A stretch of 63,050 nt of DNA, filler included, from Parasitella parasitica NRRL 2501 (lineage: Eukaryota > Fungi > Mucoromycota), in the NCBI GenBank assembly GCA_025201805.1. It is 11 parts of 11 records of this genome, joined end to end, with 100 filler letters (N's around TTAATTAATTAA, not from the genome) between each part and the next. Parts side by side here need not be neighbours in the genome. Positions count along the whole stretch, not along the records: positions 41,602 to 51,060 come from MU619398.1; 10 more parts are not named here. The stretch is one strand, 5' to 3'. The translations under genes and the position numbers were made by a program. Below, in pieces: positions 4,996-51,060 of this stretch; position 1 is the stretch's first letter; each line of letters begins with the position of its first letter. Below the pieces are notes generated by a model. It did not search any database, had not been told where the DNA came from, and saw nothing but the letters and a program-made list of their open reading frames with translations.

Positions 4996-5168
4996 AGAAC
5001 AGTCTTGACCTTAATTAATACCGTAATTGTCAATAAATTGCACAACAATTTAAACTGACCAACCTCTCTCTCTTTTTTTAATTTTTTTTTTTTTTACTTT
5101 TTTTCTTTCTTTCTTTTACTACTTTCCTTTTCGTTTTTTCCTTTTAATCTGTATTCTTTACAATCAAC

Positions 5169-7320
5169 ATGTCAGCTGAAGTACCTAAATCTCACCATGC
5201 TCACCATCCAGACTTGGATGAAAAACAAAAGAGGGTTAAAAAGTACGACAAATTCAATACGAATTCCCTTCGCCGTGACCTTTTACTGTCCAAGTTTGAT
5301 CGAACGCTAGTAGTGGAAAAGGCCAAATTCGAGCCTAGTAGCAACATCAGTAGCGACGAGAACACATCCACTGTGATTCAAGCAGCCCCATCTATACAAG
5401 CCCAACATGACGAAAAGCAATTCCCAAAGATAGATGTCGCCCCATATGCTGAACATACCCCGGATATCGAACATCCTAACCTTAGCAACAAGGCAGTATC
5501 ACCACCGTCTGCTACCATGACAACGCATACACTGACCACATCTCCCTCAGCACCTACACTGAGCACCGCAGCTACCAATAACAATAATGCTGCTTCTACT
5601 TCCACTTCTAATACTACTTCTACTACTACTACTACTACTACTATTACTAATATTACCAACAATTCATCGGCCTCACATTTGCCATCAGCAACTTCACATT
5701 CCGTCAGTGACCCTAAAAGAAGGTTGACACCTGGTAAAAGTGAGGTAATTTGATCATCATCATGTGCTTAATGCGCTAAATTGACTTGTGTGTCTCTCTC
5801 CCTCTTTCAAGAATAACGGCTCAATACCCATTCGTTCACCATCGACCCTGCAGAGCAATAGAAAAGTCATGAAGAAGCAATCCAAGTCGACGATGAGCGG
5901 CACAGCGAGTCCGGCCGAAGTATTTCATAGAAACTTGGTGGATGCAGTGTCCAATGTAGACGGTACTGTATAATGTGCAGAGTATGGATCTTATACTAAT
6001 AGGGCCAAAACATTCAGACTCTGATGAAAACGAGCATTATGTGTATCCGTATAGTGGAAATGAGTCGAATACATCCGGCATGCATCGACCATTGTCTGTC
6101 CGGTCTACATCCGCAAGCCTCCTTGATTGGAAAAAGAGATCAGGGAAAGGCTTTGGAGACTGGCTGAGACGAACGCTTTATGACAAATCTGCACAGCCTG
6201 TAGTAGATGAGGAAGAAGAGGATTTGCTTTGGTCTGGCGGCGAGCAGCAGCAATCGCAGCAGCGAAGACCAAAGCTAAGGAACCATGTCAAAGATCACCA
6301 GCAGCAAGCGAACAAGTCAAGTTTGCTGGATTTGTGGCATGACAGCTTCAACAAGAAATACCCATCTCCCTCTGCATCAAAAAAATCGTTTGCTAAAAAG
6401 TATTATTCAACGCAGAAGCACTCGCCATCTTACATAGGACAGGCAAATAGAAATGGCGGCTACACTAGCGATGATGAAGCAGCGCCTTTAATACTAAGAA
6501 GACAGAAACGATCGCCTGCCAAGCCGAAAAAGACATGGTAAAATCAAGCCCTGCGATTGTGTAATGCGGCGACTAACCTCAATTATAGCACCCATACGCT
6601 GCAAAACTTGCTGCTGTCGATTGTGCTACTAGTGCTGTTGGTGATGCTGATAATAGTGTACAAGGCGCAGCCATTAATGGAATTAACGGTCGATATGGGC
6701 CGAGTACTGGCCACTGACAAGGAGCTCATTTTTGATTTAAGAGTCAAGGCAAACAATTGGAACTGGTGGTCCATTCATGTTGCTGAGGCAGACATTAGTG
6801 TCTTTGCATTTAGCCAGATTGTGCCCAGCAGCAACGTCGTTGTCAGCGACATAGGTGCGGGCACCATCCGAGGCGTTGATCCAGCAGAGTATTTGGGCGG
6901 TTTAACGCACTTTGATGAGCCTCTGTCGATACCATCGAACCTGCTCAACCGTGATAGTCCATTGGCAGCCATCAGTCAAATTAGAATCAAATCGCCTGGA
7001 GCAGATGCTAGCGGGAATGAGCGATGGTTTGTGCTTTTAATAAGGTTTCCATAGGACATTTTAGACTCATGTTGTCATTGTTTAGGTCTCGGATGATTCG
7101 GTATCCTTATGGACTTGTAGTTAGAGGCGTGCTTAAATACAAGCCCGTCCCCTTTCTGTTGGGCACGTATCCGCAATCCGTAGCCATCTGCAATGTCACG
7201 CGAGTCGACCCTACTACGGGTGCGGTATCCTCAGATCCAGATAGAACTGTTTGCTCCAGCCAGGACACTGTAAGCATATTTTCTCACGGTCGTCATACGA
7301 GGACTGTTGTTCAGCTATAA
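5169..7320 (+). CDS. VAC7: Vacuolar segregation protein Vac7-like (Fab1 regulator); 6 exons
   Basis: Introns 5745-5811, 5963-6017, 6538-6588, 7027-7085, 7270-7314. Motif AEVFHRNLVDAVSNVDDSDENEHYVY, a single TM, and a lumenal domain (VLATDKELIFDLRVKANNWN...ERWSRMIRYPYGLVVRGVLKY). Confidence 0.75.
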
Positions 7321-7396
7321 TAAAAAGGGCTCTCTGAGCATTGTAAATATCGTATACACATATACATATCTTATTTTCAGTCCACTAGCAAATAAC

Positions 7397-8401
7397 ATGA
7401 GCAAACTCGTAGTTTATGGAGGTGCCGGTGCTCTTGGCCGCTGCCTTGTTAATCATTTCAAGTCAAAAGACTATGTAGGTTGGTGTATACATTCGCTTGC
7501 GCACATCATTTACTGTTTTGTCGATAGTTTGTGATTAACGTTGATCTTGTCGAGAATCAAGACGCGAGCTACAACATACTGGCCACCAACACTGGCTCTC
7601 TTGCTGAGCAAGGTGAATCTATTGATACATCTATCGCCACTGTTTTGGAGTCAGAAAAGTTATGCGCTGTCTTTTGTGTTGCTGGAGGTTGGGCTGGAGG
7701 GAATGCTGCAAACAAAGGTATATTGTATAGCACATGGCAACAGAGCTGTCTTGTCTGATGTGCATGCTATATAGAGTTCTTGAATTCGTCTGAATTAATG
7801 CTGAACCAAAGCGTCCACTCTTCTTTGATTGCTGCTCGAATCGCTTCCAAACATCTTCAACCGTAAAGTATATCTACAGACTTTTGCATGAATTAGGCCG
7901 CTAACCTAATACGCACAAAGAGGTGGACTCTTGACCTTGACAGGCGCATTGGCCGCTTTGGAAGCTACTCCTGGCATGATTGGTTATGGTATGGCAAAGG
8001 CTGCTGTACACCATCTCGTGAAAGACCTAGCTGCTCCCAACGGCGGACTTCCTGAAGGTTGCAAGGTTACTGCTGTATTACCGTACGTCGTATCTTTGAA
8101 TTATTGATATATATATATATGCACTATACAGAACATAACTAAAATGCCCTATAGAATCACAATTGATACTCCCATGAACAGAAAGTATATGCCCCGTTCT
8201 GATTTCTCTACCTGGACATCTCCACAAGATATTGCAAAGTAAGTTTGGGATTTTTTGTGTTGTTTAGTGTTGGACAGGTGACGAATGTGGTATTTGTATA
8301 GACAATTGGAAGGCTACCTTACAGGCGCCTTGCCTCTTGCTAGCGGCAAGCTTGTTCGGGCTGTTACAGAAAACAGTCAAACTACGTTTGATCAAATTTA
8401 A
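7397..8401 (+). CDS. QDPR: Dihydropteridine reductase (SDR family), multi-exon
   Basis: [10 protein letters not shown] Rossmann motif, [40 protein letters not shown], ending [19 protein letters not shown]-stop. Several short GT-AG introns. Confidence 0.9.
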
Positions 8402-9738
8402 GAAATAAATCACAACAACACTTGTAAGGCTGTCGACGTTCAAGGTGTACCTGTTTGTCTTGTGGCATTGTGAAAGGTATCACAATTTAAATGCATACTA
8501 TTATACCGTAATTATCGCTGTGGGAAGCTTGAACTGGAGAGATGTAACCTTTTTGAATGAAATGTATTAATCTATATTGCATGCGAGTTGATTTTGAAAT
8601 CGATTCCACAAATCAGCAAGTAAAGTACGCGCATCATGATAAGATTCAAGGCACATTGTTGGCATAACAAAGGGAATGCCAAATTTGTCTAGAAGACGAC
8701 TTTGCGTAGCATACCATGTATTGCACTGCATAGATCGATGAGATTAAGCTTTTTTGTTTTATTTTGTTTTTTTTTGATCCAGGAACATGCGATATTATTT
8801 CAAAAGGACGACCTGCTCTAGAAAAAATTCTTGTATCATAAACGTATTTTCAGACAACCATTGCTCATTAAAATAAGTAGCAGCTCTTTCAAAGGAATTG
8901 CATCATTTCGGATGCCTCTACTGATATCCACTGTAAAATTTTTAGCTTGAAAATAAACTCAAGATGTGCGTTATACTTGTTTAAACTCTTTGATCTGTCA
9001 TAATTAAGAAGACTTTACTGTTAAGGGATTATTTGTTCTATTTGGCATTGCGACCACAAAAACGAATAAACTTTACCACGACACAAAACATCACTGTGGC
9101 ACTCTGGATTCTTTTGTACAAAGGTCTTTTGTAGGTATGTAAAACCGAGCAGGCAACAAGAATAGTTCGATTTGGGGTTTGGTATCATTTTACAATGGCT
9201 GTTAATCAAGGCCTGCGTTATAGCAAACCATTATAATGCTTTTAAGCTCTACGGTTCACTCCAAGGCCGCAAATCAGACACAAGTAGTACTACTATATAG
9301 ATCAAAAGGGAAAGTCTACATCGTGCTTTTACGGCTCTGTGTGTGAGAAGGATAGTATCAGATGATTAGTACACTTGTATCTTGTAACCTTTTTCTGCGT
9401 TATTGCTGATCTTATTGGAGCTTGCCCAATAACTTTCTTAATTTTTTACCCTTCTGTTCATTGCTTGTGAGCATTTCACATGAATTGAACAATAGGGAGG
9501 GGAGAGAGATCAATTTTCGTAATAGGGCCCTGTCAGACGACAGAAACTCTAGGATAATACAGATGCTCTACTGTGCAACTGAGAGAAATCTCGTTTTGCC
9601 CATGTCCTTGTGTACAAAAGAAAATGTTGTATAAATACCACATATCCTCTGGGATCAAGTGGGGTTTTCAATACTACGATTATCCTCTCTTTGTCACCTC
9701 TATACAGATCTTTTATTCCTCTTTCTAGTTTTTCTTAA

Positions 9739-12700
9739 ATGGCTGGTAGCATACACCAAACGTATGAGCATCAGGTAGTTGTGTCTGATGGCGGCAACTA
9801 TTATCCCACAGCAGACAATGAAATAAACTCTAGCAATCAGGATAATGACGTTCTGGAAGAATACTCTGAAAAAGCGGCTCCACCTCCAAAGCAAAAGTTT
9901 TACAAGAAAAAGAGATACTGGATCATTTGCTCCATTATTACTGTCATTGTAGTGGTAGTGGTTGTTGTTTTGGCCCTGTACGTCATTTTCCCCAAGATTG
10001 CTCAATCCTTGATGAACAAATCCAAAATTGACGTTACTGCTGCTGACATTACATTCACAAAACCTGATGCCCTCGCCAACCAGGTCTATGCTAAACGCGA
10101 TGGCGATGACATGAATTCTACCTTCTACATGAACATGCAAAGTGCTCTATCTGACACTGGTCCATTTTCTGCAAAGATCAGGTTCCACAATCCTATTCAG
10201 GTGTATTATAACGAATCGTACCTTGGTGATATATTTCTCTACAACGAAACCAGCATTGGTGGTGGCCACGGTACCTTGAATGCCGTTACGCCCTTCTTGA
10301 TCAGAGACCAGCCCACTTTTGCTAGCTTTGCAAAAACCATGTTGGCTGTGGAATCCTTCAAATGGACCCTTAAAGGCAAACTTGACATTACCGCTCTTAC
10401 CAGGTTTGTTATAGCTTGTAAAATATTCTAGCAGACATATTACTAACATTTCCGTGTGTAGAACTGCAACAGTTGACTTGAATAAAGAAATTGTTCTCAA
10501 TGGTAAGTCTTGACATAGAATGCTCTTAAAACACACCCCCCCCGCTAACGCTGTCTCTAGGCATGAATGGCTTCCCAAATGTGAAAATCAACTCTTTCCA
10601 GCTTCCTGGAGATGATCCCAATGGCGGTATTCTCGTTGAACTGGGCACTGTTTTAGAGAGCCCATCTCCTATTGGCGTCCAATTGGGCACTATCAAGCTC
10701 GCAATCGGCTACGATGGCGTTCCACTTGGTTCTGTTACTGGCCAAAACGTAAACCTTGTTAAGGGCGAAAACAACATTCTTCTCAAGGGCACTCTCGCCC
10801 CTCAAAACGACACTGTGTCTCTTGAAAAGATCGGTGTGCTTTTCTCAAACTATGTCGCTGGCCAGCTCTCTAATACCACTGCAGTTGGTTTATCTTGTGC
10901 TCCTGACGGTGTCAATGCTATCGGCTGGCTTTCGGAGGGTTTCTCAACAGTCAAATTAAACGTTGGCCTGACTGCTGGCTCGCCGTTGAAGATCATCAAT
11001 GGCGTTAGTCTGGGCTACCTTGACTTGAAATTCGATCCTGCGTCTCCATACTCACCTGTTGCCAATGCACCTGCTGTCATTGCCAACTTTCAGATGCCAT
11101 TTGGTTTTACGCTGAACATCACTGAGGTCTCTCAAAATATTACGCTTGCCATCAATACCACCGGTGAGAAGACTGAGAACTTTGCCGTAATGCAAACGCC
11201 ATACACTCCTGCTGTCAGCAGCCAACAAAACGGTACCATCATCTTCCCTTTGACAAACACTGCTTTAGCTGGTATTGCTGGCAAGGAGAGCATCTACAAT
11301 CAATACACCTATGCCTTGACTGCCAATAGCAACTACACCTTTATGGTCTCTGGTATTGCTACCACTAAAGCCACCACTCCTCTCGGCCCTATCGTACTGA
11401 GCGGTATTAATTTTACTGTGCCTACTACTCTCAATGGCTTGCAGTTCTTGAATAGCTCTGCCACTGTCATCAACTCTCTTGATGTCACTGGCGGCACTGA
11501 AGCAGGCCTGGCTCTTGCTATCAATGTCACTATGGACAATCCCTCTGATTTTGGAATTTCTACTGGTGATGTGAGCTTCAACATGGGCGCCAGTGGCACT
11601 ACTCTTGGCCTTGTCACTTTGAACAACCTTACTCTGAACCGTGGCCAGAACACCGTCGCTGCTGCTGCTTCTTTTGACCCCAAATCTTCTGATGTTGGAC
11701 AAAACCTACTCAGCACTTTTGTCATGGGCTCTAACAATGCCGTCGATATCTCTGGCTATGGCAATTCCACCAACATTGCTTCCCTTGCTGAGGCTTTGAG
11801 TGTTGTCAGCCTCAGTTCTACTCTCCCTGGTCTTACAACTGCTTTGATCCAAGGCTCATCCATGGCTGTTTTGAATGATACTTTGCAAACAAGTATGGTC
11901 GGCGTCAAGGTGACTATCGCCAATCCTTTCTCTGCTGGTTTGAGCATCTCCAAGGTCGTTGCTGCTGCTACTTTTGTAGGCATGCCCGTCGGCAATATTG
12001 ACCAAGATATCAGTAGTAATCCCTTTGTTATTGGCGGCAAGAGCACTGCTACATCGCAAGATTTGAGCATGAGCATGAACCTCGAGCCTGCCGCTGTTGC
12101 CCTGCTGCTCCGTACTCTTGCACTCCAAGCTGGTATAAACACCAACGCGCTTGATGGTTTGCTTGCTCTGGGTGGCTTCAACATTGAAGGTCAAGAAGAC
12201 GTCGGTACCGACGCTAGTCTTTTCCAGGGCTTTGACGTGTCTCAATTCGTTTTAGATGCCATGAAGGCCTTAAAGGTAGACCTTTCTCTTTCGTCTACCA
12301 TTACAATTGGCCAGTATATCAATGATCTAGCCTTTTCTCAAGCCGATGTTGTTGTTGCAGCTGATAGCTCTGTTACCAAGCTGATTCCTATTGTTGGCCA
12401 GCCTATTGTACAGCAAATAGTTGATGGTTCCATTCTTGGGTTTGATAGCATTGTCATGTCTAACGTCGGCGAGTCCTCTTTTACTGTTCAAATGAAGGGC
12501 AGTATTTCCAACTCTGGGCCAATGGACGCTATCATCAGTTTTCCTACTCCTCTTACCATCTACTGGCAAGGAAGAACCCTTGGTACTGTAACCATGGCCA
12601 ATATCAATGCCAAAGCTGACGTTGGTGCTTCATTTGATGTCCAGGGTAGCTTTTCTATTGCTAGTGGAAGCGATATGGCAGACTTCTCTGCTTATTTAAT

Positions 12701-41601: not shown

Positions 41602-41633
<32 letters not shown>

Positions 41634-42555
41634 CAACAGGTCTATTGAAATTTGATATTGGTTGATATTGGTTAAAGGGATAAGCAAGAAAGCAATAAGG
41701 GAGAATCCCCGAGAGCTAAGGAAGACGATGAGCAACAAGGTAATCTTAACAATAACTAGATCAACCTTCGGATTTTAGGACTATCAATTTTCCTCGGCAG
41801 CACGAACAACATGCAACCTGAACTGAACCAGCAAGAAACATTCCTGTAAATCAGCGCTTTACTGATTCACAATTAAAAAGTTATGAAATTCAGACCATAT
41901 TAGTAGTTCTGTATCTTCTCTTGCTTTACCATTGAGTAACAGCAAGATCGACAATTTAATAAGATAACGGTAGTCTACCCAGGACCTCACTATCTCTGAG
42001 CTGAAAATATTGCATGCACCTATGTGTTTGAGGGTAATAGGCTGGTGGGAGTAAAAGCGTCTGTTGAAACGTGCAACGTACTACACAGGCATGCTAAATT
42101 ATCCACCTTTTACTTTTGCTTGTCTACCGCATTAAACAATGCTGCTCAGAATAATATGTTGAGGCCATATTTGGAATCAACACCTCTGGCGGATAAACCC
42201 AAATCATGGAACATGCAAGATACCATCATTTTAAGGATGAAAGGCAAGATCTTGAGCAAGCCTATCGAGTCACGCAATGTATGTCCTACAAGAGGAGGTA
42301 GAAACCATGATACTTTATTGTGAAATTTGTCTTTCTCATTTACTGCTTTTTTCCCTTTTTATCATCTGTACGAATAAATATTAGCAATACTCTTCATCTG
42401 ATTCAATAATACAACGTACCTAAGGTAATTCTATATCTTTTGAAAAACAAGTGTTTGTGCTATTCACTTCTAACATCTCCTTCCTTGTGTGTGCTTCAAT
42501 ACTAAACCCCCTCTTTTTTTTTTTCATCTTCTTTTTATGCAATGGCAATAAAGGA

Positions 42556-45500
42556 ATGAACAGCTCATCATATAGCTCATTTGAGTCAGGAATGAGAAAC
42601 CTGAATCTTGGTAATGACAACAATCTATACCATCACCACCCACAACAGCAACAGCAACAGCAACAACTACAGCAGCAACAGCAATATAATCAACCTCCTA
42701 ACCACAGCGGAGGGGGCCAGTGGAGCCAGGGACAGCATATTCATCAACAACAAAATAGCCAAGATTCTGACGACGAAGAAGACGACCAACCGCTCTCTTA
42801 TCAACAACAACCTTTATCAGGCAACAACTTTCCCAGACCTATTTCCATTCGCAACATGGCAACTTGTCTGAGCTCAGTAAAGCCTTCAAACTTTATAAAA
42901 CCGGCAGCACCACAGCCCAACAGTTTAATCGTGCCTCAAGATATGCGCGCTATTCAATCATTGTATGAAAGTTACTCGCAAAAGGCTTATTTCGAAGGAT
43001 ATCTCTATAAAAAGAATGAGTTGACAGTAGACGGTAAACCATTTGGCGACCCTCAATGGTCTCAGTGGTATGTAGAGCTTTGTGGACCTGTATTAACTCT
43101 TTGGGACACTCAAGCTGATCAAAACGAAAATGTAATGCCTCAATATATCAACATTACTGATTCTAATGTTGATATTATCGGTCATTCTGGTGATCCTGGT
43201 CGAGAATACGTTTTTTCTCTTAATTCGGCCGGTGCTAATCGATATTTATTTGACGTTCCAGACTTCAGTACACTCATTAATTGGGTCTGCGCTATCCGGT
43301 TGTCCTGTTTTGAATGTTCCAAGCTTCAGGAAATCTTTACACTTGGATTTTTATTACGTTCCACGTATTCTGACATGCTTGCCAAGCCAATGAATAAGAT
43401 GGAAGGGTTCGTTCAAGTAAGATTCTCAGGAACCACCGAGTGGCAAAAATATTGGGTTGTGGTATCAGACAAAAAGGAAGAGAAGAAACTTTTCGGAAAA
43501 AAATCAGTACAAGCAAGAGGCCAATTGATGTTTTATGAATCAAAAAAGGCAAAGCATCCTGTTTTGACCATGGTTAATGTGGTGCAAACTTATATCCTTT
43601 ATCCAGAATCGCCTCAAGCGATTGATCTTGTAAGCATGTTCAAAGTAGAAGGAAGCACATTTACTGTAAAACCTGGTGATGAGCAGCAAATTGCAACTTC
43701 TTGCAATAGTGCACTTATCATGGCATCAAACCCCAAAGAACTTATCCAATGGATAATTGGTACATTTGATGCATTCAAATTGTACGGTAGACCCACTCGT
43801 CTAAATGACGATCCATCCAATATCAATTCGCTCAATTTTGGGGAGCCTAAAAGTGACATACCTCGTTTGTTTTTGGAAGTACCTGAGGTCTTGCACTTAA
43901 ATTTTATGGACGAGAATCTATTGGACAACAAGGCGCAATTTGCAGGAATATTGCTTAGCAAAATACAGCAGCAAAATCGACAACATGCCCCTCCTCCACT
44001 GCATCATCAATCCCAAAATTCAGTAGGACTTATTCACCAAATATCAGCAGGAGCGCCAGCGTATAACAAGCAATTATCTCAGGGAATGTCTGCAAATCCT
44101 AGTCAGTCTTCTTCTATTAGAACTCCAGGACCACAACCTATCCAACAGCAACAAAAACAACAACGCAATACGTCTGCAACAGTCCGAAGAGTCTACGCCA
44201 GTGATGAAGGAAGCGACGATGATGAAGATGACGAAGATGGCGAGGAAGATGATAGTGATTATGATTCTACATTCAATGATAGAAACCCCAAATTGCAAAC
44301 AAAAAATAGCTTGTCTTTGCCAGCTATGACGGCTTCAGAAGATGATGGATTTGCTAGTTGTATTTTGGGAAATATCGAAAAGAAGAGAACGCCGCCTTCT
44401 CCTCCTCAACTATCCACTCAAACTTTGCTAGCAGGTCATGCACCAAGCACAAACTTACCGATAATAGAAAAAGATGCCAAGAGCGAAGATGAATTTGGGC
44501 TATCTGATAGCGAAAATGAAGAACCTAGCCGAGTTCCTGTTGCTACTACCAAGAGGCCTAAGCCAAGGATGGCAAGAACACAAGTCAGTCTTAGTGGGTC
44601 TGATACAGAAGAGGAAAAAGAAGTGGCTGATGATGCTAGTTACTCTGGTAGCGATAATGATGACAATGTCCCAATTCATCAACAATACCAACAGCAACAG
44701 CAACAAAGACTCCAACAACTGCAATATATGGACTACAGCGACCCGCGTCTTCAGTATCAACAAGGGCAACCTCACTGGGGCAGTGCCAGCATGTATGGTG
44801 GTGCAAATATGATGGAGCAACAACATCACTATTTTGACGAACATGGCTATCCTATAATAGATGAGGATGGCCCGATCATCCCTCAATTAGGTGATAGATT
44901 CGCAACACAAAATAGTCTATTAGACACTTACAGACCAGATCGTGCTTCCGCCCATGATCAAGAAGGATATGCCAGAGCTACAGGACAACCACTTATACAG
45001 GTCCCTAATAAACCGCCAGAGCCTCGTGCTGGTTTGGTTGGTATGATCTCTCAAATTGAGAGCGAAAAGAAACAGAAAGAATCTAGCAAAATTCGTTTTG
45101 GAGAAGTGGAACGCGATCGCATGGTGGAGCGTGAAAGAGAAAGATATATGATGGAACAGCGTTCACAAATGATGCAACAGGTAGATTTGTAATTATATTG
45201 AAATGTATGTCTACATACTCACTTTTCCTTATTATTAGCCCATGATGGGACAAAGCATGAATATGATGGGACAGCCTATGAACTATCCAGCAATGAATCC
45301 TGCTATGATGCAGATGATGGGTGGTCAAATGCCAATGATGAACATGATGGGTCAACCAATGATGTATCCCGGAATGATGAATATGCAAATGATGACTCCA
45401 ATGATTGATCCTCGCACAATGATGATGATGCAACAGCAATATGGGCAATACCCCGCGTGGCAGCAGCAGCAGCAACAGCAACCACAGCAGGAAATGTATG

Positions 45501-45586
45501 GTAACGGTAGATTCAATGGCATTCAAGAAGAAGATGAGGATGACGATGTCCCACTTGGTGCAAAAGACCCACATACCCAAAAATAA
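42556..45586 (+). CDS. Skg3/Caf120-like tandem PH-domain protein with Q-rich and acidic low-complexity regions; 2 exons
   Basis: YFEGYLYKKN...WYVELCGPVLTLWD...PQYINITD...LNSAGANRYLF...AIRLSCFE; EGFVQVRFSGTTEWQKYWVV; YPESP; DAFKLYGRP. Intron 45181-45238. Probable ATG at 42556. Confidence 0.8.
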
Positions 45587-45915
45587 ATAACTTTAATAAA
45601 TATAGATCATCTCACCCCTATATTGCTAATACATTTGAGAATTCATGTTTATTCAAATACAAATCAATGGATATTCTGCTTTTCGAACCTGTTTTACAAG
45701 GAGGATAAAAATTTCTAGTATTTGTAATTGATGGTATCGCCACCGTGATCGTAGTAATACACAGACCAATGTGCCTGGCTGAACATCTGGAGCTTTTTGT
45801 ATTCGTATCTTCATCATGGCTTTCTAGTTGATGTGACTGTAGAAACAAACTAAGGATCTTGATTATAGCAAATTCGATTCATTTCTTTTTTTTTAATCAA
45901 CTTTTAAGATACTAC

Positions 45916-47046
45916 ATGGAAACAAAACCAAAGAGACAAGTCTCCCGGCCCTATATTCCTGTGCATAGACGTAATCAACCTGAAAGAATAGCAACGCTAC
46001 CATCGCCAACACCGGCTAAAACACTACTAAAGGAGGAGGCCGAAGTTAAACGGCGTGGGAGAGGCCAATTTAGAGCACCTAGAGAAGAGGAAGTTGACAC
46101 AACATCAAATATCGAAGACTCAATATTGAAGTCTAAAATTTCGAAAAATGATGTAGATACTGAAGCTTTGGGGTGCGAAATATTGTAATTGCTTACAGAT
46201 TTAAATAGATCCTTATAGAAAAATTGACCGAAAAAGTTGAAAATTTTGCGATCGACACCGATAACGATAAAGAAGACTGGGAGGAAGAATTCGAATCAGA
46301 CACTGATGATATCAAAACAAAAGTAGAACCAATGAAAGCAATTTTTGCAAAAGAGCCAGCACCACTGATTTGTGGTAATTTATCATAAAATTGATGAAAC
46401 GAGAATCTAACAAGCTGAGTTTTTCATTTAGATGACGAATTAACAACGACACTTGATTGTTATGATTTTCCGAGTTCATTCAAAACATACCATTTGCAAG
46501 ACATGTTTCGAGAATATGAATCAATGAAAGGTGGCTACAGTATAAAATGGATGGATGATACCAGAGCATTGATTGTTTTTGAACATCCGAATACAGGTAA
46601 TCTCGGTTTGGCTATTAAAGTGAATATAAATTGAATGTACCCAATTTGGTAGCCAAGAAGGCATACATAGATCACATTAATAGCCCAATTGTGAAGATCC
46701 GGCCTTATAAAGGACATGTAGATAATAAATGTAAGTAATGCTTCTTGCTATGGATATGGACGTTCATTCTTCTTCATTTATAGTATCGGGTCCTGTTCCT
46801 CGTCGACCCGTAACTACAGATATGGTTGCTAGAAGATTAGTCCATAGTGCTTTGGGTGTCAGATCAATGAAAACTGCTGAGCAGCGTCAGGCTGAAAAAG
46901 AGTTATTGAAAGCAGTAAAAGGTATTATGCAGAAGTAACAAGAGCATATCGTTATTAAACTGTACATGTTAATAGAACAACGCCGCGCTGAGAAAGCAAA
47001 TAACGCGGCAAGAGAAAAGCAGATTGCAAGTGCATTTGACGAGTAG
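45916..47046 (+). CDS. R3HCC1/R3HCC1L-like RRM-domain protein, multi-exon
   Basis: YIPVHRR, RRGRGQF, LDCYDFPSSFKTYHL...IKWMDDTRALIVFEHP..AKKAY, RPVTTDMVARRLVHSALG. Several short introns. Confidence 0.75.
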
Positions 47047-48016
47047 TGATTATATAAAAAAAAATTTGCTAGAATACATAGTAGATACAGCAATTATCCT
47101 ATTTTTTGTTGTTCGTGGTTATATTGAGCACACCCCTGAATGTTGCTTATTATTTCCATTTTTTCTTATGTTGATCAAGAAATCATTGTTCACGAATCAA
47201 AAATGCTAGTAAACTAAACAGAGATTTGGGGTAATTATGAATGTAACAAGATAAAATAGTTTACGTACATTACAAGAAGGAAGCTCGTTACCAAATTAAT
47301 GAACTTTTTGCGTAACCCTTTACTTGTTTTATCTCTTGCACAAATCTTTTGTCTACGGTATTGCTTTGATAGAGAGCGCACGAATAGTAAAACGAGAAAA
47401 TTATGGATTAATGTACCAAAGCAGATCAAGCAATATTGTAGTAAGCACCAGGTTATATTTGCCCAGCTTATGAAATAGAAAAGTAAGGCGAACAGAAAAC
47501 CAGGATATACAGGCACGAAAATAAGTTTATAATGAACCAAAAATATACAATATAGCAGTGGTATATATTAATTACGACGGGTCATGCAGTAAAAAAGATA
47601 TAAGACAAGAAAAGAAATCAAAGTGAAAAGTAGCTAGTTACTAAATGGACACTGGAAGTATATACAATATCAGTGTAGATCTAGAATATGTGCGGTACAA
47701 GGTGATCTTGTTCGATGATTTTGGTATTAGATTGAAATTAATGATGTTCTTAAAGTCCATAGGTATTTGAAGCCATCTGGCATAGACTAGGATGAATAAC
47801 CTAATAAACTGTATGACCCAAAGTACTATTCGGGTTCACACAAGGAATAAAGCTCGAAGATAACTATACTTGATACCACATTCTTGTAGGATGACTTGGG
47901 TGTTGTAATAATATAATGTATTTGATTTTGGAGCAGGTGTTGAAATAAAGGTGAAACAATCATTTCATCTAATCCAACATTATTGTGAAATATATGTTAC
48001 GGGGCTACTGATACTA

Positions 48017-49990
48017 CAGTGTAGCAAGTCTCTTCTTCCTGGATCCATGAGCACCCATTTTTCATTAGTTTCTTTCAATTTTTCTTATGTTAAATCTTCG
48101 ATATATCTCGTTTCATCACCGGCTACATTCTTATTACTCTTGAATGGCGGCCCTTTTCGGGAGTTATCGCAGTTCTGTTCAATGGTACTGGCGCCAACTC
48201 CATCAGTTTCAAGAGTACCTTTGAAGCTTAAGGATCCTTGATTTTTAAAAGCCTTGGTTTTAAGATTGACTATATCCTCAGTTCTCGAGTTAACTTCTTG
48301 GCATCAAAGGTTTCTTGCTTTGAATAATATGGTAGTGGATAATCTTGCTGTCTAACGTCATGTAGCAAGGAATAAACGTCGTTCTTAATGGGAAACAGAA
48401 AAATTGCTTTAGCTGCACCGATTCAAACAATTTAGCAAGTTTAGCAAAGGCTTTGAAGTGGTTTTCTGGATTAGCCTTTACATCGTAGAGGATTGAGTCC
48501 ATTTTAAACTTGTAATTTTCTGGATATGCCGACAAGAAAGTTTGTATTTTTGGTTTTGATGATTTATTCAAAATATCAATGTTGGGCATGCCTTTTTTGG
48601 CTACAGCTTCTATAACTTGGTTACAGGGATTGTAAGCCTTTTGTCGTATCGCTTCTTTAATAGCTTCTTCACTAAACGCATTGGACGCCATTTCTTTACG
48701 GATGGTATCCGCTCTTTCTTTTTTTTCACAGAGCTTATTTAGTAGAGTTCGCAATCTATTTCCAAAATGGGTCTTTATGTTGTTAAGATAGGCAGTTTGG
48801 ATCTTGGTGCACTCATATAGTGCTATTTGTTGAGCATTCACCAGTTTGATTGGAGTATAATTCGCGTCTTCCAAGTAAGATTGTTGATATTTTGCTATGA
48901 ACTTCCTTTACTCTGCAGTCGTGTCTTTAAGCTTAACAGACCTGCGGGTAGTATTTTGGATCAGAGACAAGAACACTTCCACAAAGAATTCTTTTCGNNN
49001 NNNNNNNTAGCTTCTTCACTAAACGCATTGGACGCCATTTCTTTACGGATGGTATCCGCTCTTTCTTTTTTTTCACAGAGCTTATTTAGTAGAGTTCGCA
49101 ATATATTTCCAAAATGGGTCTTTATGCTGTTAAGATAAGCAGTTTGGATCTTGGTGCGCTCATATAGTGCGATTTGTTGAGCATTCACCAGTTTGATTGA
49201 AAGTATAATTTGCGTCTTCCAAGCAAGATTGTTGATATTCTGCTATGAAGTTCCTCTACTCTGCAATAGTGTCTTTAAGCTTAACAGACCTGCGGGTAGT
49301 ATTTTGGACAATCAGAGACAAGAACACTTCCACAAAGAATTCTTTTCGTACAAATTCATTCAAGTTGAAATTGCTGTTTGTGGCCAGTTCTTTCAAGAAC
49401 ATGTATTTTGAAAAAGCAGATGTGTGAGTGAGGACTGTATGAGTAGTATTCACTAGATTATACAATGGCTGCAGAAATTCTGGTTTCCATATATTGTTGA
49501 TCGCCGTTTTCACTGTCATCACCTTTTTTCTTATTTTACCATCAAAGCTTTTCGTTTTAGAACCAGGCTCGGTAGTAGTAGAGTCAGACTTGGAAGCAGT
49601 AACATTGGGTACATTCATCAGATTGTGTAGTCTTGCCTGATTCACCTGTCATTGGACCTTGAGCATTGGTGTTACGAAAGCCGATCTTGCTTGTGCTACC
49701 AATTTCGTCTTTGACCCTCTTTCTTGCCTGTTTAATGGGTGTTTAAAATGCTTTGACTCTTCTGCATTTATGAATATAATGTGCTAATACATACTTCTTT
49801 TTCTAAAGGTTACTGATGGCTGAAAATCATCGTCTGAATTGTCGGTAATAATTTTTTCATATCTGTCTATCATCATAGCTTAAATTAGTAACGTTTTGAT
49901 CAGAAATTAGTATGTATCTTTACCGTTTCTGTTCTTAAAAGACTCCCCTTCAGAGCAAGAAGTAGAAGTATCCTTCCTACTTGTCGTCAT
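48017..49990 (-). pseudogene. Fanzor1 (eukaryotic TnpB/Cas12-like nuclease) pseudogene, truncated just after RuvC-I
   Basis: TVKTAINNIW...HTSAFSKYMFL...FFVEVFLSL; NAQQIALYE...YLNNIKTHFG; YDVKANPENHF; FPLRTTFIPCYMTLD; FKGTLETDGVG; YIEDL; VLMDPGRRDLLHC. In-frame stops and frameshifts. Two short 5' introns upstream of about 49760. Confidence 0.8.
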
Positions 49991-50224
49991 CTGTACTTTC
50001 CTGAAGGGAACTAGTTTAAAAAAGAAACAAATGTGTAGAAAAAGAAACAAGACAAAAAATATCTATGGAGGATATGCAATGTAGGTTCTAGGAACGATAA
50101 TACGTGCTTTTGAATACAACATTTAATTTTGAGGAAACACCATTTATTTTTTTCCAATGAATGTTTATATTCCAATAAATGCCATTTGTGTTTTCAAAAT
50201 GGACAAAATTTACAGGTTGCACTG
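48017..50224 (-). mobile_element. Tc1/mariner-type non-autonomous element carrying the Fanzor gene
   Basis: TA|CAGTG at 48015-48021 and CACTG|TA at 50220-50226. AAATAAATGG-like subterminal repeats. 50197-50215 is the exact inverse of 59128-59146. Confidence 0.55.
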
Positions 50225-50512
50225 TATATACAAATACAAAGTAAGGGATAGATGATGATGTTTATTCTTTTGTGTTTCAATTGATATTTATAAAACTTAA
50301 AGGTTTTACATAAAGTCTGTGTGTTGTCGTGATAATTGTTAATTCAATAAGGCAAATATATGTATCAGTTAAAAGATGAGGTTTATTCAATTTGACATAT
50401 GATCTACTACTTATATTGTTTTCAAAACTAACGTACGAGAGTGTGTCAGGTACACTCAGACTTTGTGTGTACCTGACACTACTACATTCACTACTGACGA
50501 TAGCCGTAGTGT

Positions 50513-50519
50513 AAAAAAA
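50513..50519 (-). terminator. RNA polymerase III terminator (T7) of tRNA-Phe
   Basis: Run of seven T on the minus strand 2 nt after the discriminator base. Confidence 0.85.
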
Positions 50520-50521
50520 TT

Positions 50522-50594
50522 TGCGGGTAAAGCGGATCGAACGCTTGGCCTTTAGATCTTCAGTCTAACGCTCTCCCAGCTGAGCTATACCCGC
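50522..50594 (-). tRNA. tRNA-Phe (GAA), intronless
   Basis: GCGGGTA/TACCCGC acceptor stem, GCTC/GAGC D arm, TTAGA-CTGAAGA-TCTAA anticodon arm, AAGCG-TTCGATC-CGCTT T arm. Confidence 0.97.
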
Positions 50595-50629
50595 ACCTTT
50601 CTTTCTCCTAACCAATTTTTTACCTAATT

Positions 50630-51060
50630 TGGAACATTCACTTTTTGTAAGAAATTGTATAACACTTCATCCATCCATCTCGATAAAAGCTTCATCATTG
50701 CATCCTTCGAGAAAATTAGCTCACCTACTTCGTTGCCTTCAGATTCTCTTTTTTCTGGCTTGAAACGGCCTATTTCGTCTCGATCTCCACCTTTATTTGC
50801 GTTTGATCTCGTACAACAAATAAAGTCCAAAAGATACTCAACAACATTTGGAGATCCCAAGCCCGCTCCTCCTGCCCAAATGAATCTATCAACACCAGAT
50901 ATGATTGATTTCGGTGTTACTGCCCTCCCGTCTGCCTCTTCTGAGGGCGACTTGAACATGGCGTCCTTCGTTCTTGAAGTTCGCAATCGTTTGAGTCGTC
51001 TAGAGTCTGCTCATGCTGAGATCTCTCGGCTAAGAGCAGCTCTAGCAGAATCAGAGTCTG
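50630..51060 (+). mobile_element. Probable LINE 5' UTR and start of ORF1 (coiled-coil), runs into a gap
   Basis: Pyrimidine-rich leader, then MNLSTPDM...MASFVLEVRNRLSRLESAHAEISRLRAALAESES (heptad pattern). Adjacent contig carries the ORF1 C-terminus and ORF2. Confidence 0.45.

What the first reader, a model, noticed from the sequence alone, without database searches (positions are those of the whole stretch)
48017..49990. Fanzor1 (eukaryotic OMEGA/TnpB-like RNA-guided nuclease) gene hidden across several broken ORFs
Seen: stitching minus-strand frames gives, in order, TVKT..IW, FFVEVFLSL, YLNNIKTHFG, FPLRTTFIPCYMTLD, FKGTLETDGVG, YIEDL and VLMDPGRRDLL. The last three lie outside the supplied ORF track. 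Known: a TDGV motif followed by a DPG RuvC-I motif is the Fanzor1 signature, and Fanzor1 occurs in Mucorales transposons. Seen: the gene has two short spliceosomal-type introns at its 5' end. Inference: this copy is dead (stops, no RuvC-II/III, no 3' omegaRNA region), but it marks a Fanzor family that may have intact members elsewhere in this genome.
Basis: partly seen in the sequence, partly recalled or inferred. Interest (0 to 1): 0.85.

Follow-up and report, generated by a model that had tools for sequence, protein, structure and literature searches.

The report
Truncated dead Fanzor1 gene relic
This is the broken front 58% of a Fanzor1 RNA-guided nuclease gene, left by a Tc1/mariner-type transposon in the fungus Parasitella parasitica, a species whose active Fanzor1 is already characterised, so it is a correct call but ordinary.

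Summary
Four ORF pieces, searched separately, align colinearly to Parasitella parasitica Fanzor1 (PpFz1, PDB 9CF0) at residues about 95-495 of 849, with E-values 2e-26, 8e-73, 3e-11 and 1e-3. Homology stops at 48017, 24 nt after the RuvC-I DPG motif. The rest of RuvC, the zinc-finger/TNB domain and the omegaRNA region are absent from the piece.

The flanking gene is 100% identical to a P. parasitica JGI protein, so the window is P. parasitica.

The copy carries six in-frame stops and at least two frameshifts.

The N gap lies between two 96%-identical copies of the same ~340 nt of the gene, so the two sides are not continuous.

Three other copies in the same assembly are also degenerate. They define the carrier: a TA-flanked element whose ends resemble the inverted repeats of a co-resident Tc1/mariner transposon.

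The first intron has no counterpart in PpFz1.

Verdict: a real Fanzor1 pseudogene of a known kind, with no function. Interest is low.

The parts
50175..50226 (-). Left end of the carrier transposon: a TA dinucleotide (50226-50225), then CAGTGCAACCTGTAAATTTTGTCC..., an imperfect terminal inverted repeat of Tc1/mariner type.
   Evidence: Homology among four copies (window, L001, L002, L006) starts here. Contigs of other copies diverge at 50228/50230. It is 37/50 identical to the reverse complement of the right end of a DDE_3-transposase element nested in L001 (z 13.5). It also resembles the family's own right end (z about 7).
49924..49990 (-). Putative first exon (MTTSRKDTSTSCSEGESFKNRN). It is conserved in L001 and L002 but has no counterpart in the PpFz1 gene model.
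49867..49923 (-). Candidate intron 1: GTAAAG donor, TACTAAT branch-like sites, and an acceptor AG at 49880-49879 (45 nt) or 49868-49867 (57 nt).
   Evidence: In-frame stops are shared by three copies. L002 has a 7-nt indel here. The donor is mutated to AT in L001. There is no RNA proof.
49728..49794 (-). Candidate intron 2. The GTATGT donor at 49794 follows ...FRKRS. A 67-nt version ends at CAG 49730-49728.
   Evidence: It has the same position and phase as the 70-nt first intron of the PpFz1 gene after RRKRS. The donor is conserved in three copies, but the 33-nt acceptor is not. No version gives an open frame into the body.
49259..49645 (-). Piece A: the N-terminal part of the structured body, matching PpFz1 residues about 95-190.
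   Evidence: E 2e-26 to PDB 9cf0 chain positions 505-600, which are residue number plus 410.
49008..49348 (-). Upper copy of the duplicated segment. It carries its own stop (TAG, 49258-49256) and a 1-nt insertion.
   Evidence: No contig at 95% identity or better covers 49017-49319 in three DNA runs.
48998..49007 (.). Assembly gap (10 N) at the junction of the two duplicate copies.
   Evidence: The same gap is in L003 at 10984-10993.
48293..48907 (-). Piece B: the largest open piece, matching PpFz1 residues 194-394. It includes the lower duplicate copy (48661-48997).
   Evidence: E 8e-73 to 9cf0 chain positions 604-804. There are 411 relatives in the 1.84-billion-protein library.
48088..48303 (-). 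Piece C, containing FKGTLETDGVG, matching PpFz1 residues 406-469.
   Evidence: E 2.6e-11.
48017..48084 (-). Piece D, containing VLMDPGRRDLL, matching PpFz1 residues 473-495. The RuvC-I aspartate codon is at 48045-48043. Homology ends at 48017.
   Evidence: Other copies read on as C-MKETSKTSD from this exact base.
48015..48021 (-). Truncation junction ...CACTG|TA. The last five element bases are the reverse complement of the left-end CAGTG, followed by TA.
   Evidence: True right ends of L001 and L006 read ...CAACTG|TA.
48085..49651 (-). Lesions within this span. Stops: TGA 49651-49649, TAG 49258-49256, TAA 48910-48908, TAA 48292-48290, TGA 48280-48278, TAA 48087-48085. Frameshifts: an 8-nt deletion between 49619 and 49618, and a 2-nt deletion at 48273-48275.
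   Evidence: Other copies read Tyr, Gln, Trp and Lys at four of these codons and have the 2 extra bases.

Best explanation
Window 50226-48015 (minus strand) is a non-functional relic of a Fanzor1-carrying transposon in Parasitella parasitica.

Intact relatives encode an omegaRNA-guided RuvC nuclease of about 700-850 aa, followed by an omegaRNA scaffold just after the stop codon. The whole unit sits between TA-flanked, imperfect Tc1/mariner-type inverted repeats. It is presumably moved in trans by a Tc1/mariner DDE transposase.

This copy keeps the left end, the 5' leader, and the coding sequence for PpFz1 residues about 1-495. That covers the disordered N-terminus, the part of the body upstream of RuvC (REC/WED in the usual Fanzor1 layout, not mapped here), and the first RuvC motif with its aspartate. 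It then stops.

It lacks the remaining 354 residues (the rest of RuvC, the FRI insertion, the zinc-finger/TNB domain), the omegaRNA and the right end. It also carries six stop codons and at least two frameshifts. It therefore cannot make a nuclease or a guide RNA.

Shown: identity, colinearity, truncation point, lesions, duplication at the gap, species, other copies, element ends.

Inferred: mobilisation by a Tc1/mariner transposase, and how the 3' half was lost.
For: - Colinear matches of four separately searched pieces to PDB 9cf0. P0288 is PpFz1, with an offset of 410 from chain numbering.
- tblastn with P0288, P0289, P0001, P0005, P0006, P0009, P0011 and P0015 finds no Fanzor segment elsewhere in the piece, and homology ends at 48016/48017.
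- In three independent DNA runs, a 6444-nt single-copy contig runs from the flank into the element and stops at 48051. Other copies continue past 48017 with the Fanzor reading MKETSKTSD. L001 shows the same continuation.
- Summed contig depth over the element is 5-9 times that of the unique flank.
- The flanking PH-domain gene is 100% identical to P. parasitica BD408DRAFT_448152, and L003 is this same locus.
- LE/RE and the Tc1/mariner similarity.
- There is no omegaRNA block and no right end in the piece. Rfam finds only the tRNA.
- The orthologous tRNA-Phe to RRM interval in the other P. parasitica assembly is about 770 nt with no Fanzor.
Against: - The window's own versions of several lesions (48278, 48292, and the 2-nt deletion) are not seen in any contig of the four runs. 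Only the majority paralog is seen. Contigs drop rare variants, so this does not contradict the lesions, but they rest on one assembly.
- The gap leaves open whether the upper part (50226-49008) and the lower part (48997-48017) belong to one insertion.
- One run guessed to be RNA (X7) has contigs over family sequence. They carry 3-6 differences per ~150 nt, so they come from other copies. Expression of this copy is untested.
Confidence: 0.9

Rival explanations
1. Origin of the truncation, version A: the copy was inserted already truncated. A Tc1/mariner transposase paired the true left end (TA|CAGTG...) with a cryptic internal end (...CACTG) inside the Fanzor coding sequence. It then pasted this 2.2-kb unit into a TA site, producing TA|CAGTG...CACTG|TA.
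For: The breakpoint falls exactly after CACTG and is followed by TA. True right ends in L001 and L006 are ...CAACTG|TA, and the left end is TA|CAGTG. In other copies the same internal site reads (C/T)ACTG|CA, so the TA is not donor sequence. My rough chance estimate is about 1/1024 for the pentamer times about 1/10 for TA. Deletion derivatives of this family have demonstrably transposed: L002 and L006 share one deletion.
Against: Beyond the terminal 5 nt, the cryptic end does not resemble the inverted repeat (z 0.7 over 50 nt). The transposase binding sites would therefore be missing. The pattern was noticed post hoc. The gap makes it uncertain that both ends belong to one insertion. No empty site could be aligned, because the intergenic DNA is about 50% identical to the other assembly, i.e. 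random.
Confidence: 0.35
2. Origin of the truncation, version B: a full element inserted here and later lost its 3' half, possibly with some flanking DNA, by deletion or rearrangement. The CACTG|TA at the junction is coincidence.
For: This is the default fate of old transposon copies. The copy is heavily decayed otherwise. All other sampled copies have large lesions or nested insertions.
Against: It does not explain why the junction mimics a right end plus TA.
Confidence: 0.5
3. The broken state is an assembly artefact, and the real locus holds an intact or much longer Fanzor1 gene.
For: The locus contains a gap flanked by redundant sequence. All Fanzor copies in this assembly sit at or near N gaps. 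The upper duplicate is not seen in three other runs.
Against: The truncation junction is crossed by an identical 6444-nt contig in three runs from three studies. The stop at 48910-48908 lies under contigs with no difference reported at that codon.
Confidence: 0.05
4. The fragment is a domesticated or expressed gene for an N-terminal-only protein, as the GenBank model KAI8636784.1 (178 aa) implies.
For: An annotated model exists on the locus.
Against: The model starts with MTT, skips about 500 nt, splices across the assembly gap from one duplicate into the other, and ends in a different frame (one search compared). That is typical of an ab initio artefact on a pseudogene. The stops are not avoided by any conserved intron, and there is no specific RNA support.
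Confidence: 0.03

Closest known systems
PpFz1, Parasitella parasitica Fanzor1 (PDB 9CF0-9CF3; Xu et al., Cell 2024, PMC11423790)
   Same: Same species and same protein family. It is colinear over PpFz1 residues about 95-495 at 56-57% identity. An intron sits at the same place and phase after RRKRS. Longer copies of this subfamily carry a block similar to the 5' half of the published omegaRNA.
   Different: This is a different subfamily, only 56-57% identical in protein. This copy is 3'-truncated after RuvC-I, full of stops and frameshifts, and has no omegaRNA. PpFz1 is an active nuclease with a 5'-ATN TAM and a 75-nt omegaRNA.
Fanzor1 genes captured by Tc/mariner transposons (Bao and Jurka, Mobile DNA 2013, PMC3627910; e.g. 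PUl-4)
   Same: The element encodes Fanzor1 only. Its inverted repeats resemble those of a transposase-encoding Mariner-type element in the same genome, and it has TA flanks.
   Different: That paper assigned the Mucorales examples it typed (ROr-4, PBl-3, MCi-4) to MuDr, with 9-bp duplications. Here the ends are Tc1/mariner-like. In this window only the left end survives.
SpuFz1, Spizellomyces punctatus Fanzor1 (PDB 8GKH)
   Same: Weak but colinear matches over the FPLR...IPxY..D and TDG segments (E 3.5e-5 and 0.15).
   Different: A distant relative. No other part is alignable.
Bacterial TnpB (IS200/IS605, IS607) OMEGA nucleases
   Same: They are the ancestral kind: RuvC-I D...E...D with a zinc finger, plus a 3' guide RNA (general knowledge).
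   Different: No direct sequence match from this fragment. Pfam TnpB models cover only the missing C-terminal half.

Membership tests
Fanzor1 (eukaryotic TnpB-like, omegaRNA-guided nuclease) | Significant sequence homology to established Fanzor1 proteins | tested here: met
   E 8e-73, 2e-26, 2.6e-11 and 1.2e-3 to PpFz1 for four colinear pieces. 193 relatives at E<=1e-10.
Fanzor1 (eukaryotic TnpB-like, omegaRNA-guided nuclease) | RuvC-I aspartate in its conserved context | tested here: met
   VLMDPGRRDLL at 48054-48022 aligns to VLMDPGRRDLL of PpFz1.
Fanzor1 (eukaryotic TnpB-like, omegaRNA-guided nuclease) | Remaining catalytic residues of RuvC (RuvC-II, and RuvC-III with the RD motif) | tested here: not met
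   No homology to PpFz1 residues 496-849 anywhere in 41602-51060. These residues are present in relatives, e.g. NRDLAAVLNF.
Fanzor1 (eukaryotic TnpB-like, omegaRNA-guided nuclease) | C4 zinc finger / TNB domain | tested here: not met
   Absent here. The relative P0006 gives a weak PF07282 hit at E 8.7e-4, and the relatives show CPxC...C motifs.
Fanzor1 (eukaryotic TnpB-like, omegaRNA-guided nuclease) | omegaRNA scaffold encoded at the 3' end of the gene | tested here: not met
   The conserved block shared by the published PpFz1 omegaRNA, L001 and L006 is absent from the piece. Rfam finds only a tRNA.
Fanzor1 (eukaryotic TnpB-like, omegaRNA-guided nuclease) | Intact open reading frame | tested here: not met
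   Six stops, an 8-nt deletion and a 2-nt deletion, and a duplicated segment at a gap.
Tc1/mariner-type (non-autonomous) carrier transposon | TA target-site duplication | tested here: inconclusive
   L006 has TA on both sides. L001 has TA at the right and TAA at the left. The window has TA at both junctions, but its right junction is not a true end.
Tc1/mariner-type (non-autonomous) carrier transposon | Terminal inverted repeats related to those of a DDE transposase-encoding element | tested here: met
   LE against the reverse complement of the RE scores z 6.7-7.1. LE against the right end of the nested DDE_3 element is 37/50 identical, z 13.5, with 0 of 2000 shuffles reaching it. DDE_3 E 3.5e-24. 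An exact-pattern search with up to 3 mismatches missed the similarity because of indels.
Tc1/mariner-type (non-autonomous) carrier transposon | Transposase encoded in the element | tested here: not met
   There is no transposase homology in the piece. The one in L001 is a nested insertion that interrupts the Fanzor ORF.

The most novel reading that the evidence does not exclude
This relic marks a second Fanzor1 lineage in P. parasitica, about 57% identical to PpFz1, that rides in Tc1/mariner-type shells. The lineage may still have at least one intact, active copy, hidden in the repeat-induced gaps of the assembly, with its own omegaRNA and TAM. In addition, the window copy may have arisen by transposition from a cryptic internal ...CACTG end. 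That would be a direct trace of how a DDE transposase moves and trims Fanzor cargo.
Probability: 0.25. Interest if true: 0.4.

Novelty: new member of a known kind. Interest (0 to 1): 0.15.

Why it matters
It matters little in itself. Fanzor1 in Mucorales has been known since 2013, and the P. parasitica enzyme has been solved and assayed.

Useful by-products:
- Two GenBank 'hypothetical proteins' on this locus are artefacts on a pseudogene.
- The gap at 48998-49007 hides a redundancy, not missing gene sequence.
- This Fanzor1 subfamily has Tc1/mariner-type ends and has spread as deletion derivatives. Anyone mining P. parasitica for further active Fanzors or their carrier transposons can use this.

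Tried and rejected
- Pfam on the four pieces gave only sub-threshold noise (Arm_4, Bac_DnaA_C). The Pfam TnpB/TNB models cover the missing half. The family's own model (PF26935/DUF8286, seen precomputed) is apparently not in the local library.
- Inverted-repeat scans of the window, L001 and L004 found no clean TIR. A 16-mer search for the reverse complement of the left end, with up to 3 mismatches, found nothing. The repeats are imperfect and contain indels, and they only emerged from copy-to-copy boundary alignment.
- tRNA targeting was rejected. Only this copy lies near a tRNA.
- Horizontal transfer from Parasitella into a host fungus was considered when the nearest DNA copies turned out to be P. 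parasitica. It was rejected because the window itself is P. parasitica.
- An empty-site test against the other P. parasitica assembly failed at base level, because the intergenic DNA is too diverged.
- The search of earlier findings was not open.
- No frameshift-corrected, spliced or joined protein was built or searched. All pieces were searched separately by reference. Structure prediction was not run, because the sequence match to a solved structure is already decisive.

Full report
**1. The gap first**

The 10 N at 48998-49007 sit exactly between two direct copies of the same sequence, 48661-48997 and 49008-49348. Aligned, the copies are 96.1% identical (324/337), with 13 substitutions and 4 indel columns.

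On the minus strand the upper copy ends with ...SNAFSEEA and the lower copy starts again with RKEFFVEVFLSL. Crossing the gap therefore sends the protein back from about PpFz1 residue 313 to about 183. The letters on the two sides are neither continuous nor in frame, whatever the true gap length.

- The lower copy is closer to a paralog elsewhere in the genome (98.5% to L001) than the upper copy is (95.0%).
- In X1, a contig covering 48898-48997 runs on with TACAAATTC, which is identical to 49349-49357. A form without the duplicate therefore exists in at least one copy of the family.
- In three DNA runs, no contig at 95% identity or better lies on 49017-49319.
- Every Fanzor copy I fetched from this assembly sits at or next to an N gap.

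I read the duplication as redundant contig ends inside a repeat family (about 60%). The alternative, about 40%, is a true partial duplication or two adjacent fragments. Contigs cannot settle it.

**2. The observation**

All seven quoted peptides are present on the minus strand, in the stated order. FFVEVFLSL occurs twice because of the duplicate.

I searched the open pieces separately by reference. I built no joined, spliced or frameshift-corrected protein. Each piece hits one PDB sequence, the MBP fusion of Parasitella parasitica Fanzor1 (9cf0):

| Window piece | PDB chain positions | E-value |
|---|---|---|
| 49259-49645 | 505-600 | 2e-26 |
| 48293-48907 | 604-804 | 8e-73 |
| 48088-48303 | 816-879 | 2.6e-11 |
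| 47983-48084 | 883-905 | 1.2e-3 |

P0288 (849 aa) is PpFz1 itself, and chain position equals residue number plus 410. The window therefore keeps residues about 95-495 in recognisable form, at 56-57% identity. A weaker match runs back to residue 5, the SDDDFQP motif.

An exhaustive search of 1.84 billion representative proteins with the 205-aa piece gave 411 relatives, 40 of them at E<=1e-30. The named ones are from Rhizopus, Mucor and Parasitella.

**3. Where it ends and how it is broken**

tblastn with eight full-length relatives finds nothing else in 41602-51060, and every alignment stops at 48016.

Independent runs agree:

- A 6444-nt single-copy contig, identical in X1, X2 and X6, comes from the flank and stops at 48051.
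- Contigs of other copies diverge below 48017. Their reverse complement reads C-MKETSKTSD, the normal Fanzor continuation.
- L001 shows the same continuation, VLMDPGRRDLLYCMKETSKTSDKQ....

About 354 residues are missing. By PpFz1's published layout that is the rest of RuvC, the FRI insertion and the TNB zinc finger.

Lesions in what remains:

| Lesion | Position | What other copies have |
|---|---|---|
| TGA stop | 49651-49649 | - |
| 8-nt deletion | between 49619 and 49618 | L001 and L002 have the 8 nt |
| TAG stop (upper duplicate) | 49258-49256 | TAC (Tyr) in L001 and L002 |
| TAA stop (lower duplicate) | 48910-48908 | TAC (Tyr) in L001 and L002 |
| TAA stop | 48292-48290 | Gln |
| TGA stop | 48280-48278 | Trp |
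| 2-nt deletion | 48273-48275 | Two extra bases |
| TAA stop | 48087-48085 | AAA (Lys) in L001 |

No omegaRNA-like block and no right end are present. Rfam finds only the tRNA.

**4. The introns**

The PpFz1 gene (L004 3001-5680) has two introns that reproduce the deposited protein exactly. One is 70 nt, phase 1, right after RRKRS. The other is 60 nt, after residue 795.

An intron at this place is therefore credible. However, the 33-nt version ends at an AG that only this copy has, and 33 nt seems short to me for a fungal spliceosomal intron. A 67-nt version ending at 49728 is closer in length to PpFz1's 70-nt intron. Neither version opens the frame into the body, because of further indels.

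The first candidate (49923-49867 or 49923-49879) has good signals. All three copies carry stops within it, and L002 has a 7-nt indel there. But PpFz1's start codon lies downstream of the equivalent point, so this candidate has no reference. No raw RNA reads were available.

**5. Organism and annotation**

The neighbouring PH-domain gene is 100% identical over its full length to P. parasitica BD408DRAFT_448152. L003 (GCA_025201805.1, MU619398.1) is this very locus.

The GenBank model KAI8636784.1 (P0151) on it begins with MTT, skips ahead, splices from the upper duplicate across the gap into the lower one, and ends out of frame. It is a prediction artefact. The same applies to a 74-aa model on the opposite strand at 48017-48241.

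**6. The family and its carrier**

Three other copies in the same assembly were fetched:

- L001 is 95-98% identical to 48017-48997 and extends to the C-terminus. It contains a 605-N gap, a nested Tc1/mariner element with an intact 421-aa DDE_3 transposase ORF, and a deletion in the segment just before the zinc finger.
- L002 and L006 share one internal deletion (L001 6454 to 9219). A deletion derivative has therefore moved at least twice.

Copy-to-copy boundaries define the ends:

- The left end is TA|CAGTGCAACCTGTAAATTTTGTCC (window 50224 downward).
- The right end is ...AATCAGTTCAACTG|TA, about 150 nt after the stop codon.

The two ends are imperfect inverted repeats (z about 7). The left end is 37/50 identical to the reverse complement of the nested transposon's right end...GCCGCACTG|TA (z 13.5).

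This is the arrangement Bao and Jurka described for Fanzor1-only elements with Mariner TIRs and TA duplications.

Summed contig depth over the element is 5-9 times that of the flank.

The orthologous interval in the other P. parasitica assembly is about 770 nt with no Fanzor.

**7. How the 3' half was lost**

The junction reads ...GCTACACTG|TAGTATC. CACTG is the reverse complement of the left-end CAGTG, and the next two bases are TA. This mimics a true right end plus a target duplication. Other copies read (C/T)ACTG|CA at that internal site.

This suggests transposition from a cryptic internal end (about 35%). Beyond the 5 nt there is no resemblance to the repeat, so an ordinary later deletion remains at least as likely (about 50%).

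**8. Verdict**

It is not surprising. The species is the source of the structurally and biochemically characterised PpFz1, and Fanzor1 in Mucorales transposons has been known since 2013. No intact member of this particular subfamily was found among annotated proteins or the fetched loci.

Interest 0.15. Novelty: new (dead) member of a known kind.

Noticed in passing
window 50521-50595 (-): tRNA-Phe (GAA), 290 nt upstream of the element's left end. Other copies of the family have no tRNA nearby, so this is not a targeting preference.
   Followed up: yes
window 47556-47878 (+): A contig from run X7 (guessed to be RNA) shows a 54-nt GT..AG joint from 47698 to 47753. This looks like an unannotated spliced transcript between the relic and the RRM_Thc1 gene.
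   Followed up: no
window 49990-48270 (-) and 48017-48241 (+): GenBank gene models KAI8636784.1 (178 aa) and a 74-aa model are ab initio artefacts laid over the pseudogene. The first splices across the assembly gap.
   Followed up: yes
L001 7403-8902: A Tc1/mariner element with an intact 421-aa DDE_3 transposase ORF is nested inside a Fanzor1 copy. Its right end is ...GCCGCACTG|TA. It is a candidate mobiliser of the Fanzor elements.
   Followed up: partly
L002 ~6181/10092 and L006 ~5007-5012: Two copies at different loci share the same internal deletion (L001 6454 to 9219). A non-autonomous deletion derivative has therefore been propagated.
   Followed up: partly
L004 5706-5776; L001 ~9581-9735; L006 ~5372-5531: The published PpFz1 omegaRNA maps 26 nt after the stop codon. 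A similar CCACCAAG...ATGCAGGTA block exists in L001 and L006. However, copy-to-copy homology continues about 85-110 nt further, to the TA-flanked end. The usual guide position would then lie inside the element. This is unexplained.
   Followed up: partly
L007 compared with L003: The two assemblies labelled P. parasitica are only 75-81% identical in DNA across shared genes here (82% in the PH protein). The tRNA-RRM-PH block is in the opposite orientation relative to the WHD_GDS1 block, with an N gap between the blocks in both assemblies.
   Followed up: no
L005 4306-5120: In Rhizopus delemar RA 99-880, a Tc1-like transposase fragment lies about 1 kb upstream of a Fanzor1 homolog (gene at 6001-7525).
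   Followed up: no
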